Shown: in pieces, positions 58 through 57,726 of the stretch
Numbering within the stretch: the stretch's first letter is position 1
Layout: each line of letters starts with the position of its first letter
Assembly (NCBI RefSeq): GCF_033153115.1
Contig: NW_026889757.1
Span: forward strand, 5,022,001 to 5,086,000
Direction: 5' to 3'
Source of the DNA: Saccostrea echinata
Taxonomy: Eukaryota
Length of the DNA: 64,000 nucleotides
Translations under genes and position numbers: made by a program
The notes under the pieces: model-generated
Told to the model about the DNA's origin: nothing
Database searches by the model: none
The model's input: the letters and a program-made list of their open reading frames with translations, nothing else

Positions 58-3000
58 TTGGATGCACTGAAACGTACTGTTGATCGCACTGCCACTGACC
101 TAGAAGTCACAAGGTCACAAGTCTCTCAGCTGAAAAAGGATGTCCAAGAAAAAACTAACAAGTAATTAGAGATTACATGTATTTTATATCATTTTTAATA
201 TTATATATTGTATATACTTTAACGCTTGATTTATATGAATTTAATGTAATTATTTTTGCATTCAGAAATATGCTAAAAATTTTAAAACTTTTTCTAGACT
301 TCAGATGGCAAAAGATTTGAGAGAAACATTAGTAGAAAAGTTAAAAATAGCAACAGAATCCACACTGAGTGCAGAGGAACGAGCAGCTCGCATGGATGAA
401 ATGTTGGAGGAAGAAGAAAAAGTTCAGAAAGAGTATGATCAGAAACTGAAGGCACTTAGAGATCTTCAGTTCCGTAAAACCCAGGAACTTCACGAATGTA
501 AAGTATCGGAGAGAAACACAGAAGCTGAAATCCAGGTTAATTAAAGAGTAGTTAGTTAGACTGAGTTTATGTGTACCATCCCTATGAAGTTTTCTCTTAC
601 AATTGTTTTGTATTTTCTTTAAAGAACAGAAAGATGATTTTTTTCCCCCAGAAAATTTTCTGTAATAAAAGTTCTTACATAATTTCAGGGAAGTCAAGCT
701 GCTATTCGTAATCTAAACAGCAAAATATCCAAAGTGGACACAGATGCCCTCAAACAGCAGGAAATTATATACAACCAGGTACATTTTTGTTGCAAATGAA
801 GAAACTTTACAAAAGGTTAACATGATTAACAAGTTGTATGAGTAGGATTGTGGTACAGTTCATAAATCACTTGATCTTAATATAAATTGCTGGAAAGTCA
901 TGTGTTTTGTTGATATGTGAATTCTTTTTAAAAGAAAAATTATAAACACAAAGTATTTTATAAAGTGTGGCTGAGTTGAAAATTTTTATAACATTTTGCT
1001 GCTTTTTTTTCAGGACTTTGCAGTTCAACAGTTGGAAAGAAGGATCAACAGAATGCAAGGAGAAAGAAGCAATGAGGAAAAGGTTGCCCTGGAGGCCAAA
1101 ATTAAGGACCTGAATGATGATTTAGAACAGAGAAATAACACACACACACTACTGACACTGCAGCTCAAAAGACTCCAGGTTTGTTTATTTGAAAATTTTC
1201 ATATTCTGCTTTATTACCTAATTAGTATGGTAGAAGCATTAGTATTTTTTTTAATGTCAAAGATTCTTTAGAGTCAGTTGTAATGAAGTATAAGATTTGA
1301 AAAATAAATGACTTCAGTACATACAGTATTATAAGTAGTCTTTTCTTAAATTTAATTGTAAATGAACACACTTATATCAAGAAGAGAAAAAAAAACATTG
1401 CAGTTAATTCCATGGTCTGATATTTTCAGGATGACATTCGTCGTGTGAAGAGAGATCTGGAGAAGTCTGGAGCTGAGAAATGTGACCTGACGAGTAAGAT
1501 AGAGGAAATAAATCTGTACAATGACAGCTCTGAGAAAGAACTGAGGAAAATCATCAAAAACAAACAGGTCTGTTCTCAAAGTCCAAAATTTAAAATAAGA
1601 AAAGATTTTTGTATTCTAAAATAAGAAGTTCATAGGCAAGAAAGGATTCAAAAATTTTTTTTTCTTGCAGGACATGATGGTAGATCAGAATATCCTTAAA
1701 CTCGAAATCAAGAGACTAAGAGAAATGCTGAATTCCAAGGCAGATGAAGTTTTTAATCTGGAGAAGAGAAGACTACAACTGGAGACGGTAATATCACTTT
1801 ATGTTTGAAAACAAAGAGATGATACATTTTCTTGTTAGAATTTTTCTAAATTTTCAAAATATGCTTTCAATAAAATTGTAATGATGAGTATGCACAACCA
1901 AATATAATTCAAAGCTGATGGATGGGTTGAATACATTGTATTTTTTAATGGCTGAAGATTTAAGAATCTGAATTGTATGTAATTGAGCTTGTTTCTAAAG
2001 GCCATGAAAGAAAGGCGCCAGGAGATAAGTATTCATAAGGAGATGTTGGATGCACAGTACCGCGCAGCTGCAGCCGAAAGGCAGCAGATCAGTGCTGAAT
2101 TACACGAACGAATCTCAAAGATTGAAAAATTAAGAAGCAGGTCTGTTTTCTATTGTATTTGGAAGAAGGCTGTTTTAAAGCTAGCTTTGCTAGTTAAAAG
2201 GGAAACCATAAGTTGATTTTCTTACTTGTAGTCTGGTTTTGCAGAAGAATGTCATTTGGCTATGAATAATAGTTCTCCATCAAATTTAGTCAAAACTACA
2301 CAAGGTTCCCTTTCTAATGCCCACAGCTAGCATCAGGCAGCCATCTTATTTGATATTTTGGTTAAAATTGTTTATCATAATTTCCATCAGGCTATGAAAG
2401 AGAGACGACAAGAAATATTTATCCATAAAGAGATGCTAGAGGCTCAGCATCGTTCTGCGAACACAGAACGTCAACAAATAAGTGCTGAACTGCAAGAAAG
2501 AATTGCTAAGATTGATAAATTAAGGAAGAGGTTTGTCAGAGAATGGCTTAAATCCTAGCATAGCTGCATGTGTCAATCTCTCTGAAACTTCACTCAACCT
2601 TTAGTAAATCTTCTTGAACCCAAAATTCCACTCTAAACTATAACATACTAGTAAACTGTGTACATCAGCAATTTCAATTTTTTACTAAGCATTTCTCAAC
2701 TTATTTCTCTCACCCATTCCTCTTTCCTTTTACAAATGGTAGTTGAGATTAAACTTTATACTTCTGTATGGGATTTTGCAAAATAGACTTGCATGACTAA
2801 AATCCCTGTATTTTTATAACATGGAAACATCCTGTATTTTGTGTATTGAATTGCATGTCATCTCTGTTGATTCCCTCTCTCTTTCTGTAAATATGTATGT
2901 ATATCAGACTGCTAACTTATTTCTGTCTTAGTCTAGTAAAACTTATGTGAATGTATTTAGACTTTCAAAATACTTCTTGTACATGCACTAACATCTACAA

Positions 3001-5802
3001 CTTTTAGTTCTGTAATTCTGTTGTTTCAAAAGTTTTAAATTTGGTATCTATTTCAGTAGTTCTTATTTAACTTAATTAGCTTTGTTAAGATTTAAATGAG
3101 CTATATATTATCTTCATGATTATTTAAGTTATGTAAGACAATCAACAAAGTCAGGAGATGGAGATGGAGGACAGTATCAGAATTTCGTACATGTACACTT
3201 AAGTATTTGGTTTTTATGAAAGACGTACAGATATGCAATAAATAACCTGAGAAATGATCATTCAATGCTTGCCTTATCCAGATATGAAATCCTGATGGTT
3301 TCCATGGCACCACCAGAGGGAGAGGAGGAAAGATCTCAAGCCTATTATGTCATCAAGGTAAAGTATTTAGTCTCAAGTGTAGTTTTTGTGGTTTATTCCA
3401 CAGACACTTTACGTTACATATTTTTCTTATTTAAAAAAATAGAACCCAATTTCTGAAAACTTTGATTTAGGTATGCCTATGAGGTTATATTTCTTTTAAA
3501 TATGGTAAGAAAAATATGTAATGTCAACTGCCTGTGATTTATTCATTCATAAAGCTCTTGTTGAAATTTTAATTCATTTCTAACAACATGCAGTATATTT
3601 GTTAGCAAATTATCATAGTTCATTGTCAATTGGTATTTCTTGATTCTGAATATTTGATTGGGTAGGAAATTGTTTGAATATGGATATTATTGGGATCTGG
3701 ATATTGAGTGGAAGCATGTTCACATAGATATTGTTAGAATTATTATGTGTATGGATCTGAATATGGTATACATCCAGATACTTTTTTATATGAATATTAT
3801 ATGGATCTGGATGTTGTATTTAGGCTGCCCAAGAGAAGGAAGAGCTGCAGCGACAGGGAGATGATCTGGATGCTAAGATCAGAAAGGCAGAAAAAGAAAT
3901 CAGAGCCCTGGAAAACACACTTAAACTGATGAACAATCGCAATGAGACTTATAGGAAGAGCTTCAATAAAGTCACTGAATCCAGTAAATAGTTTCTATGT
4001 AGTGTAAAATCATGAAGTCTGTTTTATAATGTGTTGGAAAATTTTCACCCTGATGCTTATTTTAAATGTCTATCTTTCTCTATCATTTATTAAGTCATTG
4101 TAAAATTTTCTCATCTGTTTTGTTTACATTTGACAGATGTGTAAATTATGCAAATAGGTTTTGTATTTTTCAAATCTTTCAATATAGAAATGTATAATTT
4201 CCTTTCAATTACTTAATAATTACATGTAAGATATTGCAGTATTTATACTGTATGAGACATGTGTGATATATTTTTGGATGTTGTAGGTGATGAAATGGAG
4301 GAGAAGGCACAGCTGGAGGAACAGATGAGGGCAGTGATGGACAAGTTTAAATACAAGAGACGTCAGATCCGCGAATTACAAGAGGACTTACAGACAATGA
4401 GTAACACGCTGGACAACCTCAACAGGGATGAACAGGCATATGAAGAAATGATTGAGGAGAAAGAGGTAAGAAGTAATTCAAAAAATGACCCCTTATTAAA
4501 GGAAAAAATGTTTAAATTAAAGAGATACAGTTCAACATAGTATGCATGGCTCAGGAGCATAGAACTTAAGATATTAGAAAAAAAAAATATTAAGTATTTT
4601 TTACTTATTTTAACAGAACAAGAGGTTGCAATTGAACAAAGAGCTTGATGACCAGAGATCTAAGCTGGAAAGAGTTGCCAAGCAGGTAAATATTCTAGAA
4701 TTCTGTTTCTTACACAGGTAGGATGGGAGGTAATTCAAATAGAGTATGTTAGAGCATCTTTGTTTAGACGTGACAGTGAATGATTTTTTGTTTCTATTAC
4801 ACATTTCAGAATTCAAAGTATGCCAGAGAACTAAGATCAGCCAAGAAATCAAAAGGAGAGACAAATGAGGAGGTTTGTGTTTAATTATTCAGCAAAATAG
4901 AGTTCTTCTCATTTAAACGAAAAAATTTCTATATTTTCACATGTTAGATCTAAGTTTTGTATTATTGGTTTTGTTTTGAATGTTCTTTCAAAATTTCTTT
5001 CTACAGAAAGATTTTGATGTCCGTGAATTGCGAGAATTTAATAGACAGGCAATGCAACAGATAGGAGATGTCATACAAAAGCACCCTGACATAAGTGAAG
5101 CAGTCAACATGTATTTCTCCCAGGTTTGATTTTTTGGTCAAACTTATCAAATACAGTACATGTAGAGATCATTTTTGTAGCCATTGCATGGATGTTTAAT
5201 GAATTACTGGTAAATGCATCATCTTTGACCTAGTTTAGCATGTGATTTGGTATAATGTTCCAGGGGACATAATGACAGAAATTGAAAATCAACGTTAGAA
5301 AAATGATTTCTGATTTTTTGTATATATAGGCCAACCTACCTCCCCCGACCCCCAGTGGCCGTCAGCCAGGAAGTGCCCGTAGTAGTCTAGGGTCAGTCCG
5401 CAGTAGCTCCAGCATCAAATCTCCACCTAGTGGTAGTGGACGACCTACACCTGTACAGATCGGAGCAGACTTTGGAGGTAGACATGAATTTAGAAATCTT
5501 CTACAATAGTTATTGGAGTTCTTTTAGCATTAAAAACTTCATGGGAAAAAAAACAACTTTGAGAATTTCTAGCATCAAGTATGTTATAAAATGGTTTATC
5601 ATGTTTTTAGGGGGAAAGTAGTGGAATAAAACCTTATTTTCATTTCTGTGCAATGATAGTACATGAGGATTATGAATATGCATCAGTTAGATTTTTTTCT
5701 GATTATTTTTTAGCGGTTCGCTCCCCTGCTAGTTCACGCAGTTCCAGTTCCATGGGAAGTGTGAGGAGTTCCGGAAGCCGAGCCGGGACGGGTCGACGAT
5801 AA
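58..5802 (+). CDS. CCDC39: Coiled-coil domain-containing protein 39 (axonemal 96-nm ruler subunit); 5'-partial, ~630 C-terminal aa
   Basis: Phase-consistent GT-AG exons: 58-161, 298-535, 689-778, 1014-1178, 1430-1567, 1671-1787, [2001-2140 OR 2391-2530], 3282-3357, 3824-3983, 4287-4465, 4617-4685, 4810-4872, 5007-5123, 5330-5477, 5714-5802 (TAA). Peptides [78 protein letters not shown] recognised as CCDC39-like; Ser/Arg-rich tail; AATAAA near 5857 and 6014. Confidence 0.92.
2001..2140 (+). CDS. CCDC39: CCDC39 alternative exon A (140 nt, phase 0 to 2)
   Basis: ctaaag|GCC...AGCAG|gtctgt; encodes [46 protein letters not shown]. Confidence 0.85.
2391..2530 (+). CDS. CCDC39: CCDC39 alternative exon B (140 nt, phase 0 to 2)
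   Basis: ccatcag|GCT...AAGAG|gtttgt; encodes [46 protein letters not shown]. Confidence 0.85.
2565..2992 (+). promoter_or_regulatory. Cluster of candidate intronic splicing elements downstream of exon B
   Basis: TGCATG (Rbfox motif) at 2565, 2790 and 2852; ACTAAC (QKI/STAR motif) at 2987. Confidence 0.45.
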
Positions 5803-52916: not shown

Positions 52917-55900
52917 TTTGGGAATGGGAAGCAGATCTATTTTATTTCTGATAGCTTTTCCTGCTCGTGTACCTGAAGAAATTATACCTTTAATATCTGT
53001 CGTATCGTTTTGGGAGGATGCAGTATTAATAGATGACATCACGGATTTCAATGTTGACGACATCTCTTTAGATGTAGCCACTGATGATGTTGTTAAATTA
53101 CCGGTATTTGTAAGTGTGACAGATCCAGTTGAATTTGTAATTTCCATGACGTTAGTTCTGGTTTTTGATGATTCCCCTGAAAAAGTTGTCATTGACGTCG
53201 TCGAGTAATTTGTTGATTTGTTTTTATCTACAGTAGATGTTGCTTCTGTACTTGTTGAGATCGTTGCTTCAAATCTCTGCGTCTGTGCTTCAGTGCTTAA
53301 TTCTGTTGAAGTAATTGTAGACACTGTCGTAACAGATGTTTCACTTGATGAAGGCCTAGTGGATATATCAGTCGATGTTAAATTTGACCCATCGACCGAT
53401 GAAAAATAAACTGTAGATGTTGTAGTTTCAATATCTTTGTTCGTTGTATTTGGCATATTTGTCATTGACGTTTGCTTCTCTGAACTTGTAATTTCTTCTT
53501 CGTTAGATGTTGTTTCTACCATGATAGTTGTTGAGACTGTCGATATATTTGTAGGAGACGATACTGTAGATATTGGTGTTGAATTTGTATCTGACGAATC
53601 AGTGTCCCGAAGTGTTACTGTAAATGGAGAAGTTATTGTAGAACTTTCCGAACTCTTTTGTAACTCAGTGCGTGTTGGTTCTGATGTCGACGACTCATCC
53701 AATATTTCTGGCGTATTTAATGTTGCGGATGAGTTTTGCGGTGATTGTATAAACACTGTGGTTTGAATGCCCTCTGATGTGGATGTTATTCCTGTAATCG
53801 TGTCTGTTGACGTTGATAGTTGAACTTCTGTCGTTGATAACGTTGATGTAAGTGTCTCGGTCATTTCTAGAGTTGTTTGCATAATAGCAGATTTTGTTGT
53901 CTCACTTGATGTGGAATCAAAAATCCCTTCAGATAATGAAGTGGTTTTCTCTGTAGAAGGCTTTCTTGTTAGCAACAATGCTGGATTTGATGTTGATGTA
54001 TGGATTTTTTCTAGAGTAGTAGTTATTCCAGTCATATATGATGTTGAGGTCTCTACTGTTGATGGTTTTTCTGTTGATTCAATGGTTGTTTCCATTACGG
54101 AAGTTGCTGTTGTCTCAATAGATGAGGAATTATAGATCTCTGTAGAGGATGATGTTGATATATCTGTCGCAGTCTGTGTTGAAAGTACTGATGTCGGATT
54201 AGTTAGAGTATTAGTAGTTTCAAGACTTGTTTCATTAGCGGCTGATGTTGTTGCCGCACTTGGTGTTGAACTTGCAATTCCTGTTGTTGATGGAATGAAT
54301 TGTTCTGTAGCAGTCTCCGTAGACATTTGCAATGTTTGATTTGTTATCGTGTCTACATATGGTGTTTCTGTGGAAGACCTTTGTGTACTTGACACTAAGG
54401 TCCCTGTAGATGATTCAGAAGAACTAAAAACATTTGTTGTAATGTGAGTCAACGGTTCTGTTGGACTTACTGATTGTTCTGTGATTTCTGTGGCATTTAT
54501 GGTTTCAAAAGTGGCAGATCCAATGGTTGTTGATACATTTGATAATTCCATTGTAAAATTTGATTGATCGGTAGATGTAAAATTTACAGATGTTGATTGT
54601 GTAGTTAAAGTTATTGATGTTTCTGTGGAAGAACTTTCTGTACTGGACTCTAAAATAGCTGTGGAAGAATCAGAGGAATTAAAAAAGAACGTTGTACTTC
54701 CCGTCAACGCTTTGGTAGCACTTGTTGATTGTTCTATGGATTTAGTGGCATTTAAGGTGATAGATTCCAAGGCAGTTGAGGATGTATTTGATAATTCGAC
54801 TGTAAAATTTGATTGGTCAGAAGATGTAAAGTTTACAATTGTTGATTGTGTAGTTAAAGTTGTTGATGTTTCTGTAGAACTTTCTGTACTGGACTCTAAA
54901 ATTCCTGTGGAAGAATCAGAGGAATTAAACGTTGTACTTTGCGTCATGGCTTCGGTAGCACTTGTTGATTGTTCTATGGGTTTAGTGGCATTTAAGGTGG
55001 TGGATTCCAAGGCTGTTGTGGATGCATTTGATAATTCGACTGTAAAATTTGATTGGGCAGTAGTTATAAGGTTTACAAATGTTGTGTGTGTAGATGAAGT
55101 TTTTGATGTTTCTGTAGAGGAACTTTCTGTACTTGTCCCTAAAAACCCGGTATAGGAGTGGGATGAACTAAAAACATTCGCTGTACTTTGCATCAGTGGT
55201 ACAGTGGTACTTGTTGATTGTTCTACGGTTTTAGTGTCATTTGTGGTATCAAAAGTCGTAGTTTCCAAGGCTGTTGTGGATGCATTTGAGAATTCGGTTG
55301 TAAAAATTGTTTGGTCGGTAGATGTACGATTTACAAATGCTGATTGTGTAGTTAAAGGTATTGATATTTCCGTGGAAGAACGTTCTGTACTTGTCTCTAA
55401 ATTACCACTGTAGGAATCGGACGAGCTAAAAACATTCGTTGTATTTTGCGTCGGTACAGTTGTACTTGTTGATTGTTCTACGGGTTCGGTAACATTTTTG
55501 GATTCAAAAGTGGTAGACTCCAATGCTGTTGTGGATGCATTTGAGAATTCGGTTGTGAAATTGGATTGATCGGCTGTTGTACGGCTTGTAGATGTTGATT
55601 GTGTAGTTGAAAGTGTTGATGTTGACTGTGTGGATTGAACATAAGGATAACTCTTTTCATTAAATGTTTTTGTTTCTACATAAGAAACTTTAAAAGAGTT
55701 AAGATCAATTTGTATTGCTGAACTACTTTGTTGATAAGAACTTCCATTAACTATGGAATCTTCGATTATTGTGACGGTCAGAATTTTCTCGGCGGTAAAA
55801 ACCATTTCAAAGAAGACTACAACACTTCCATTTCTGCAAAACAAATAAATTAAATTAAAAAAAAATAATTCAACATGCAGCATCTTTGCAAATAAAATTT

Positions 55901-57726
55901 AATGTTCATCAAACTACCAGTAATCTGCTGTTATACATGATCGATTCTGGAGATTTTTGGCACTTACTTTAGTTCCTTAACATTGCATTCTCTATACGCC
56001 TGCGAGACATTTGTTCCTTGTATTATATTCTTCATCTAAACAATTATACAATATTCGTATTTGAAGAGATAAAATCAGTTGTAAAATAAATCAGATCAAG
56101 ATAGAAACAAAAAAATGTAACTATTAATTAGTATCTATGTTTAAATCAATATTCATCCAACATGTTTGAATTAACCCACCTCAGAGCAGAATATTGCGCT
56201 GAAGTTTTTAAATTCTTTGGAGTTCGGATCTTTAAACTGTTCCACATAGGACTGATTAACGGTCATGGTACTGTCGGCAACATCTGTATAAAAAGAATAT
56301 GAATTATTCAACATGTATGAAATTAGTACAAGCGATCTATAATATATCTATATGGTCCTTTATTTCTCAACACACACTCACAGTATGTTTTAAACGTTGT
56401 TTCTTCATCTGAAATAAAACAAAAATAAATGTTATTCCCTTGCAACATTTTTTTTTTTATCTAATTAAGCCATGATTTTTTTTAAAAAAAATTCTAAATT
56501 TTAAAATTGTCAGCAAACAGTAGAATAAAGATTGATTAACCTTGTACAATAATGAACACAATGACGGGAGTAACCACTAGGCATATCAAAGCAATGCCCC
56601 CGAGAATATAAAAGACAGTCTTGCGCAGTATGTTTGTTTCTGGGTCGTAGAAACTTGTGGAATCTCGGTCACTCTCCGGTTGAAACTCTCTAGTTTGTAA
56701 AGGATACTTTGTATTCAAACGTAGACTTGCCTAGGTAGATGTATAAGTAGAAGAAAGATTTGATAAAATTTAAACACTTCAAGCAATATGTATATATATT
56801 TATATATATATAATCCGTTTTAATTAAAGGAGCTATAGCCTGTTTAATATTTCATTTTACATGTTTACTCCTTTGTATCAATGATTGAGACGTCACAGTA
56901 TATGGTTTTTGCGTTAAAAGTGATGGTCAAATAAAGTAGATTCACATATGAAACAGTAAAACATGTGACTAAAACAATCTCCCATTTGCTTGTGGTTGGA
57001 TCTGCTTTTTATCCAGCTCGTGGTTGTGTTTTCTATCCCCTCGCCAAGGCTGGGGGATAAAAAAAAAACACCACTTGTCATATTCAACCAATACCATGGG
57101 ATATCCTGCATATATTACTCATATTACCCATAATCATATACTGTAATATATCATTTTCCATTGCTCTCTTTAATAAACATGTACGACAAATATATTGAAA
57201 TAAAACAATAATGTTTTACGATTTTTTTTTCATCTTATTTGAAAAGAAGTTTATAAACACTAGTTAATGAACTAGTTACTTCATATGTACTTACTCGGAA
57301 GGACTGGCGGTCTAAATAATTTCTCTTGAAGGTACCCCCCAGAATCTTATCCATCCATTCTCCGGATTCTGCAAACGTCTCTCCGTGCCAGCCATTCTGA
57401 CTTCCAAACTCATCAAAGTGGAACGATCCCCCAGCAGGATCAAAGAACACGCTCTCTCCAATGTCCCTTTTTGATGACTTCCCGAGATAGGTGTCTTTCC
57501 CAAAATTAACTTCACTTTCCGATTCAGAGTCATTATTGTTGTCCTGTTCCTTCGGAGATCCGAAACCCCTCCCCTCTCTTGAGATTCGCTCAGAATTCCT
57601 AGGTATTGTTTGAGATTCGACAATCGATTCTGGTATTGTCCATATTTTGCTTTTATCGTCTGTCCTACAAACTTCGTAACGGCTACTTTTCGGTATCTTT
57701 GAAGGATAAAACCATTCCCGTGACAT
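51509..57726 (-). CDS. Type II membrane mucin-like protein, ~1500 aa: cytoplasmic N-terminus, TM, SEA domain, Ser/Thr stalk, two Ig-like domains
   Basis: Phase-consistent exons 57726-57295, 56730-56541 (TM VFYILGGIALICLVVTPVIVFIIV), 56408-56382, 56283-56180 (FKDPNSKEFKNFSAIFCSE), 56035-55968, 55833-52973 (KNGSVVVFFEM, then S/T-rich), 52828-52673, 52282-51938, 51831-51509. The last two exons follow phase-1 introns, are ~110 aa, look beta-rich and have paired Cys. Confidence 0.8.
54350..55575 (-). repeat. About five degenerate ~80-aa coding repeats in the mucin stalk
   Basis: Recurring DQSNFTxExSNxSTTALESxT...EQSTS...SSDSSTGxLExSTExSSTE. Confidence 0.85.

What the first reader, a model, noticed from the sequence alone, without database searches (positions are those of the whole stretch)
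2001..2530. Obligately mutually exclusive duplicated exon in CCDC39: two versions of the axonemal ruler
Seen: two 140-nt exons with identical phases (0 to 2) and intact AG/GT sites. 36 of 46 residues are identical, yet 20 of those 36 codons differ synonymously and the flanking introns are not similar, which indicates an old duplication with both copies under purifying selection. Including both gives AG|G CTA TGA (stop at 2395); skipping both gives ACG|ATA TGA; so only A-or-B transcripts are in frame. Established: CCDC39/CCDC40 set the 96-nm axonemal repeat and ruler length matters. Inference: an equal-length swap changes ten residues (e.g. YRAAAA vs HRSANT) without changing ruler length, and could give different cilia (sperm, gill, larval, sensory) different dynein/N-DRC docking surfaces. 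I do not know of such an exon pair being described for CCDC39, but cannot search.
Basis: partly seen in the sequence, partly recalled or inferred. Interest (0 to 1): 0.8.

Follow-up and report, generated by a model that had tools for sequence, protein, structure and literature searches.

The report
Alternative exon pair in oyster CCDC39
An oyster gene for CCDC39, one half of the "ruler" that spaces the motors along a beating cilium, has two either/or versions of one 46-residue segment; the pair is real and shared by six oyster species, but public gene models already show it and its purpose is untested.

Summary
Exons A (2001-2140) and B (2391-2530) are both 140 nt, in the same phase, with AG/GT sites. 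They share 36 of 46 residues, with 20 synonymous codon differences, and their flanking introns are unrelated. The gene is CCDC39, and the exon matches human residues 595-639. Synonymous sites are saturated and dN is 0.14. Using both exons or neither gives an immediate stop.

RefSeq already models two equal-length isoforms (X1/X2) in six oysters: Ostrea edulis, Saccostrea cucullata, S. echinata, Crassostrea virginica, C. angulata and Magallana gigas. Within each species the isoforms differ only in this exon. The window's A and B peptides are identical to S. echinata X2 and X1.

A and B each form a well-supported clade. This fits one duplication before these oyster genera split. Annotated proteins of scallops, mussels and clams show only one version.

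B evolves at the gene's average rate; A is among the fastest 5% of segments. A 2.3-kb C. virginica mRNA contig carries B.

In four RNA contig sets of this species, A dominates. B's donor joint appears once, at about 5% depth. B's acceptor joint was not seen.

Verdict: a genuine tandem-duplicated mutually exclusive exon pair, catalogued but undiscussed. Any cilium-type-specific function is conjecture.

The parts
1672..1787 (+). Constitutive CCDC39 exon upstream of the pair; it ends in phase 0 (…LQLET)
   Evidence: Joints 1564>1668 and 1787>2001 in all four runs; translation.
2001..2140 (+). Exon A, 140 nt (46 codons + 2 nt). It is the version in S. echinata isoform X2 and the dominant form in the four runs laid.
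   Evidence: Joints 1787>2001 and 2140>3282 in all four runs at contig depth 83-535. Identical to the XP_061171424.1 segment. PDB match to CCDC39 residues 595-639, E 3e-9.
2141..2390 (+). Intron between A and B, 250 nt. It is long enough that steric hindrance cannot enforce exclusivity. It is retained in minor contigs.
   Evidence: Contigs spanning 2111-2424 (X3) and 2111-2528 (X4) at depth 3.8-15. Read-through from A hits a stop at 2214-2216.
2391..2530 (+). Exon B, 140 nt. It is the version in S. echinata isoform X1 and the minor form in the four runs laid.
   Evidence: Joint 2530>3282 in run X4, one contig at depth 15. Identical to the XP_061171423.1 segment. B-type exon spliced into a C. 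virginica mRNA contig.
2531..3281 (+). Intron downstream of B, 751 nt. It is covered at low depth in RNA contigs, unlike the other introns.
   Evidence: Contigs 2403-2907 and 2913-3308 at depth 3-8 in X1-X3. The introns whose depth bins I checked (1282-1422, 1846-1986, 3538-3819, 4102-4242) are at depth 0.
3282..3358 (+). Constitutive downstream exon; its first base completes the split codon (R) that begins with the last two bases of A or B, and it then encodes [25 protein letters not shown]
   Evidence: joints into 3282 and 3358>3825.

Best explanation
This is a tandem-duplicated pair of mutually exclusive exons in the oyster CCDC39 gene (the window is most likely Saccostrea echinata). One ancestral 140-nt exon was duplicated before the six sampled oyster genera diverged. 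Each mature mRNA carries A or B, never both and never neither, because 140 is not a multiple of three and either error gives a stop within two codons. Such transcripts are expected to be cleared by nonsense-mediated decay. The result is two CCDC39 proteins of identical length that differ at ten of 46 residues in one roughly 7-nm stretch of the CCDC39/CCDC40 coiled coil. Shown: the anatomy, the frame logic, conservation of both copies in six species, use of A in this species, use of B's donor in this species, and a B-form mRNA in C. virginica. Inferred: the differences lie mostly on the outer face of the coiled coil (9 of 10 at non-core heptad positions), so the swap would alter what docks there rather than pairing with CCDC40 or ruler length; and the two forms serve different ciliated cell types or stages. 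B keeps the gene's normal rate of change, whereas A evolves about 2.5 times faster.
For: Anatomy and frames. Gene identity: exon A matches CCDC39 chains 9fqr_Iw and 8j07_h1 (residues 595-639; E 3e-9 and 2e-7), a Tetrahymena chain and Chlamydomonas FAP59. Another exon matches residues 352-423. Pfam PF24161 is the top family for both A and B. Age and selection: dS saturated, dN 0.14, and 0 of 200,000 random-substitution trials as conservative. Conservation: X1/X2 pairs of equal length in six oysters differ only at residues about 600-643. A clade support is 98/93, B clade 97/92, A+B sister 92/49. Among the six oysters B has 4 variable columns, against a gene mean of 4.1 per 46 residues, and A has 10, in the top 5%. 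Expression: joints 1787>2001 and 2140>3282 in all four runs, and joint 2530>3282 in X4. P0079 is a 763-aa open frame on a 2341-nt contig with the B exon between LQLET and RYEILMV, and it is 761/763 identical to C. virginica XP_022289236.2. Two polymorphisms seen in exon A (2060 C>T, 2072 A>G) are both synonymous by my reading of the codons. Only two copies exist in the genome. Heptad assignment.
Against: In the four RNA contig sets of this species, exon B depth is 4-15 against 75-290 for A. The B acceptor joint (1787>2391) was not seen. The only B donor joint sits on a contig that also retains the A-B intron, which is an unproductive form. The tissues of those runs are unknown. Contigs drop rare variants, so this neither proves nor excludes a B-rich tissue. 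RefSeq isoforms are automatic models. Absence of the pair outside oysters rests on annotated proteins only, not on their DNA. The heptad register is a single-register guess over a segment that may contain a stutter.
Confidence: 0.88

Rival explanations
1. Both exons are used, but the two proteins are functionally equivalent. After duplication the copies were partitioned by splicing regulation, for example by tissue or stage, and each is kept only because it is the sole version expressed somewhere. This is subfunctionalisation without a new docking property.
For: All core hydrophobic positions are identical. The ten differences are mostly conservative or at surface positions. No residue-level contact data could be obtained here.
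Against: Both copies changed the otherwise almost invariant ...[DE][21 protein letters not shown] motif, each in its own fixed way (A: IEKL[RK]S; B: ELQERIA, NTE). Those states were then held across the six species. That pattern looks like divergence followed by constraint rather than drift.
Confidence: 0.3
2. Exon B is a rarely used, largely unproductive alternative in this species. It would be splicing noise or a decay-coupled regulatory exon rather than a source of a second protein.
For: B is at most about 5% of A in four runs. The only B joint is on an intron-retaining contig with a premature stop. The intron holding B is the only one with residual coverage.
Against: A noise or poison exon would not keep 46 codons intact and at the gene's average protein conservation across six species while synonymous sites saturate. 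A full B-form mRNA contig exists in C. virginica.
Confidence: 0.07
3. The two copies are allelic haplotypes or an assembly duplication placed in tandem.
For: None beyond the tandem arrangement.
Against: Nucleotide identity is 71% with saturated synonymous sites, and the flanks are unrelated. RNA contigs span 2111-2528 continuously across both exons. The same two versions occur as isoforms of one gene in six species.
Confidence: 0.01

Closest known systems
RefSeq isoform pairs of oyster CCDC39: S. echinata XP_061171423.1/XP_061171424.1, M. gigas XP_011428427.3/XP_011428428.3, C. virginica XP_022289237.2/XP_022289236.2, O. edulis XP_048746440.2/XP_048746441.2, and the C. angulata and S. cucullata pairs
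   Same: They are the same thing: two equal-length proteins that differ only in this 46-residue exon. The window's A and B peptides are identical to the S. echinata pair.
   Different: They are automatic gene models without comment. In the library searched, no paper discusses the pair, its age, its unequal rates or its function.
Tandem-duplicated mutually exclusive exons in general, such as the human cases catalogued in PMC5740500, PMC8373072 and PMC9741552, ATE1 exons 7a/7b (PMC7797038) and SCN alpha exons 5a/5b (PMC12772994)
   Same: Adjacent homologous exons of equal length and phase, an ancient origin, both under purifying selection, and isoforms that differ by a homologous substitution.
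   Different: The gene is different. CCDC39 does not appear in the main text of the human catalogue I checked, and the pair is seen only in oysters among annotated animals here. No competing RNA structure of the ATE1 type could be shown. Here the frame rule (140 nt = 3n+2) is enough to remove wrong combinations.
CCDC39/CCDC40 (FAP59/FAP172) 96-nm molecular ruler
   Same: The gene is the orthologue. The exon aligns to human 595-639, Chlamydomonas FAP59 606-649 and Tetrahymena 655-698.
   Different: In the organisms studied so far, as far as I found, one ruler protein is described per gene. Oysters encode two versions of one segment. Duplicating ruler segments in Chlamydomonas changes repeat length and adds docking sites (summarised in PMC6678824). 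The oyster swap keeps the length and changes only side chains.

Membership tests
CCDC39 / FAP59 orthologue | Sequence homology to CCDC39 along the coiled coil | tested here: met
   Exon A against PDB CCDC39 chains, E 3e-9 and 2e-7, colinear at 595-639. Exon 308-541 at residues 352-423, E 4e-7. A and B peptides are identical to RefSeq 'CCDC39-like' isoforms of S. echinata.
CCDC39 / FAP59 orthologue | Pfam PF24161 at gathering score | tested here: inconclusive
Single exons score 20.4 and 17 bits against a cut-off of 27, because they cover 45 of 925 profile positions. The full-length oyster proteins carry PF24161.
Tandem-duplicated mutually exclusive exons | Adjacent homologous exons of the same length and phase with intact splice sites | tested here: met
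Tandem-duplicated mutually exclusive exons | Each exon is spliced to both constitutive neighbours in mature mRNA | tested here: inconclusive
   A: both joints seen in four runs. B in this species: donor joint 2530>3282 seen once, acceptor joint not seen. B in C. virginica: a spliced mRNA contig. RefSeq B-form models exist in six species.
Tandem-duplicated mutually exclusive exons | No mature mRNA with both exons or with neither | tested here: met
   No 2140>2391 or 1787>3282 joint in four runs; this is limited because contigs drop rare forms. Both combinations give a stop within two codons.
Tandem-duplicated mutually exclusive exons | Both copies conserved under purifying selection | tested here: met
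Exclusivity by steric hindrance (intron too short) | Intron between the exons shorter than about 60 nt | tested here: not met
   The intron is 250 nt.
Exclusivity by U2/U12 splice-site incompatibility | One U12-type intron (donor like /ATATCCTT or /GTATCCTT) | tested here: not met
   All four sites are ordinary GT-AG with donors GTCTGT, GTTTGT and GTAATA.
Exclusivity by competing RNA structures (docking site and selectors) | A conserved intronic element complementary to one element beside each exon | tested here: inconclusive
   The best inverted repeats are 21-26 nt at 73-77% complementarity in AT-rich introns, and none pairs one site with both exons. Conservation could not be tested because orthologous DNA could not be fetched.

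The most novel reading that the evidence does not exclude
Oysters build two kinds of 96-nm ruler. The fast-evolving A segment and the slowly evolving B segment would be used in different axonemes, for example sperm flagella versus gill or larval cilia. The ten swapped, mostly surface residues would change which inner-arm dynein, radial-spoke base or N-DRC component docks at that point. That would be cell-type-specific tuning of the axonemal repeat by alternative splicing of the ruler itself.
Probability: 0.25. Interest if true: 0.7.

Novelty: new member of a known kind. Interest (0 to 1): 0.4.

Why it matters
CCDC39/CCDC40 is usually treated as a single, invariant scaffold that fixes where dyneins, radial spokes and the N-DRC sit. 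Oysters have kept two versions of one ruler segment across six species in four genera. That gives a natural experiment: the same length with different side chains at one address of the 96-nm repeat. If the two forms are split between sperm and somatic cilia, comparing their axonemes would show what docks at that address and how waveform is tuned. As it stands, the pair is one more conserved mutually exclusive exon pair in a genome where earlier notes of this scan report several others. It is already present in RefSeq models.

Tried and rejected
- **Orthologous DNA:** I therefore have no codon-level dN/dS per copy across species, no test for hidden second copies in Pinctada, mussels or scallops, and no check for conserved intronic elements.
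- **Short-query protein searches:** the representative and word searches with the 46-residue exon returned mostly genomic or unspliced open frames. No short B fragment joined to its neighbouring exons was found.
- **Full-length word search around the exon:** only two oyster clusters turned up, so there were no further independent B-form transcripts.
- **Literature:** no paper describes a CCDC39 mutually exclusive exon. None of the texts I could read gives residue-level contacts of CCDC39 595-640, so the variable residues were not mapped onto the cryo-EM models.
- I stopped that step, which was a check of further window exons against the oyster proteins. The species assignment therefore rests on the A and B peptides alone.
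- **Rejected explanations:** haplotype or assembly artefact, steric hindrance, and U12 incompatibility.

Full report
**What is in the sequence**

The window was read at 1500-3600. Two 140-nt segments, A (2001-2140) and B (2391-2530), are each preceded by AG and followed by GT. Both translate in the same frame without stops. The upstream exon ends at 1787 in phase 0, and the downstream exon starts at 3282.

- The two segments share 99 of 140 bases and 36 of 46 residues.
- Of the 36 identical residues, 20 use different codons. Differences by codon position are 10/3/28.
- The repeat finder reports the similarity from 1999 to 2146, so it stops at the exon borders. The flanking 30-100 nt are 25-40% identical, which is the random level.
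- Joining A to B gives AGG CTA TGA. Joining 1787 to 3282 gives ATA TGA. Only A-alone or B-alone transcripts stay in frame.

**Gene identity**

Exon A matches CCDC39 chains in solved axoneme structures:
- 9fqr_Iw, E 3e-9, and 8j07_h1, E 2e-7, both colinear at residues 595-639;
- a Tetrahymena chain (8tek_N);
- Chlamydomonas FAP59 (7ju4_A).

Another exon (308-541) matches residues 352-423. PF24161 (CCDC39) is the top Pfam family for both A and B. It scores below the gathering cut-off because one exon covers only 45 of 925 profile positions.

**More than chance, and old**

Nei-Gojobori counting gives 26.5 synonymous differences on 26.3 synonymous sites, which is saturated, and dN is 0.14. When 41 substitutions are placed at random on A, the mean is 26 residue changes. 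None of 200,000 trials gave 10 or fewer changes without a stop.

So the two copies have been kept as coding sequence for most of the time since the duplication. The whole assembly (923 Mb) holds only these two copies. That result, together with RNA contigs running continuously from A through the intron into B, excludes a haplotype or assembly artefact.

**Relatives**

A phmmer search of exon B against 1.84 billion representatives and a word search returned many short open frames from genomic or unspliced contigs. Two groups stand out:
- a B-like group with 0-3 residue changes (P0001 and P0063 and their cluster members);
- an A-like group (the P0007 cluster).

[quoted passage not shown] Its 90% cluster holds X1 and X2 isoforms of equal length for six species: Ostrea edulis, Saccostrea cucullata, S. 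echinata, Crassostrea virginica, C. angulata and Magallana gigas.

In every species the two isoforms differ only between residues about 600 and 643, which is exactly this exon. The window's A and B peptides are identical to the S. echinata segments (X2 = A, XP_061171424.1; X1 = B, XP_061171423.1). They differ from the S. cucullata A version at two positions. The window is therefore most likely S. echinata.

**Age and range of the duplication**

A maximum-likelihood tree was built from the 46-residue segment of 34 proteins.
- The six A exons form one clade (support 98/93).
- The six B exons form another (97/92).
- The two clades are sisters (92/49), nested among other bivalves.

This fits one duplication before the sampled oyster genera split. 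With only 46 columns, the deeper forks are weak.

RefSeq proteins of four scallops, four Mytilus species, Mya and Ruditapes carry no isoform pair of this kind. Dreissena's many isoform accessions share a single protein sequence. Pinctada, Tegillarca, Solemya and the unionids have one model each. This is absence from annotation, not from DNA.

**Unequal rates**

Between oyster genera the rest of the protein is 95-96% identical. Across the six species exon B has 4 variable columns, which equals the gene's mean of 4.1 per 46-residue window. Exon A has 10, placing it in the top 5% of windows.

Both copies departed from the motif that is almost invariant across lophotrochozoans (…[DE][21 protein letters not shown]). 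A changed to …[20 protein letters not shown][RK]S. B changed to …[14 protein letters not shown][AS]KIDKLRK. Each then held its own state.

**Use in RNA**

That share is close to my rough estimate of the exon fraction of the query (about 0.29). I laid four of them, from three samples, on 1000-5200. They are spliced, so they are RNA.

All four show 1787>2001 and 2140>3282 on contigs of depth 83-535. Exon B behaves differently:
- Its depth is 4-15.
- It lies on low-depth contigs that run on into the downstream intron (2403-2907) or come from the A-B intron (2111-2424).
- Only run X4 has a joint 2530>3282. That is one contig at depth 15, against 322 for 2140>3282. The same contig retains the A-B intron, which gives a stop at 2214-2216.
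- The joints 1787>2391, 2140>2391 and 1787>3282 were not seen.

The intron that holds B has residual coverage, while the four intron depth bins I checked (1282-1422, 1846-1986, 3538-3819, 4102-4242) read 0. Two polymorphisms in exon A (2060 C>T, 2072 A>G) are synonymous.

The tissues are not given, and contigs drop rare forms. The result therefore says that A is used at least about 20 times more than B in those samples, not that B is unused.

Independent evidence for B comes from P0079. It is a 763-residue open frame filling a 2341-nt public contig, with the B-type exon between …LQLET and RYEILMV…. It is 761/763 identical to C. virginica XP_022289236.2. That is a mature B-form mRNA.

**Mechanism of exclusivity**

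- Steric hindrance is ruled out: the intron between A and B is 250 nt.
- U2/U12 incompatibility is ruled out: all sites are ordinary GT-AG.
- No docking/selector pair was found. The best inverted repeats are 21-26 nt at 73-77% complementarity in AT-rich sequence, and none links one site to both exons. Their conservation could not be tested.
- The frame rule certainly applies: 140 = 3n+2, so double inclusion or double skipping ends in a stop within two codons. I infer that nonsense-mediated decay removes those products.

**What the swap changes**

Hydrophobic conservation over 131 CCDC39 proteins gives one best heptad register. Under that register, nine of the ten A/B differences fall at b, c, e or f positions and one (Y/H) at an a position. 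The core is unchanged.

This fits a change of outer surface rather than of pairing with CCDC40 or of length. It is a rough assignment and not a structure.

The review PMC6678824 summarises tagging and duplication experiments in Chlamydomonas. Duplicating the C-terminal part of the ruler adds N-DRC, RS2 and dyneins c and e. The oyster exon lies at 63-68% of the protein, so it may lie in or near that part; I could not check which residues were duplicated. None of the texts I could read gives residue-level contacts. I therefore do not name a partner.

**Novelty**

Mutually exclusive tandem exons are a well-known kind (PMC5740500, PMC9741552, PMC7797038). This instance is already present in RefSeq as X1/X2 in six species, including the window's own. 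M. gigas also has older versions of the same accessions (XP_011428427.1/.2, XP_011428428.1) and a UniProt entry, K1QZ54.

I found no paper that mentions a CCDC39 exon pair, and CCDC39 is absent from the main text of the human catalogue. Earlier notes of this scan report several other conserved pairs of this kind in the same genome. The case is real and tidy but not exceptional.

What is new here:
- the dating of the duplication to before the sampled oyster genera split;
- the unequal rates, with B conservative and A fast;
- the strong A bias in four runs of this species.

**Limits**

Noticed in passing
window 2141-3281: The intron that contains exon B has residual RNA coverage (depth 3-15) in all four runs, while the four other intron depth bins I checked (1282-1422, 1846-1986, 3538-3819, 4102-4242) read 0. 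In three runs the low-depth contigs start inside exon B (2403-2416) and run on into the downstream intron. This may reflect slow or regulated splicing around the alternative exon.
   Followed up: partly
window 1000-5200: Contigs downstream of the A/B choice (from 3282 on) have 1.4-3 times the depth of the contigs upstream of it in all four runs (for example 244 vs 83 in X1). This is probably 3' bias, but it could hide another upstream variant.
   Followed up: no
window 2001-2140 vs 2391-2530: Synonymous differences between A and B (26.5 on 26.3 sites) exceed the roughly 75% expected at saturation. A uses more G/C-ending codons than B. This could be small-sample noise, different codon preference, or selection against sequence similarity between the neighbouring exons.
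   Followed up: no
P0001 cluster (Magallana-type exon B open frames): Thirteen variants of the B open frame from more than 300 public contigs keep the 45 exon residues almost invariant. The third intron-encoded residue after the donor takes eight different values. This contrast between exon and intron is in line with constraint on B.
   Followed up: partly
window 54001-56000: A 2-kb stretch has a strong GC skew (+0.28) and a negative AT skew (-0.165), unlike the rest of the window.
   Followed up: no
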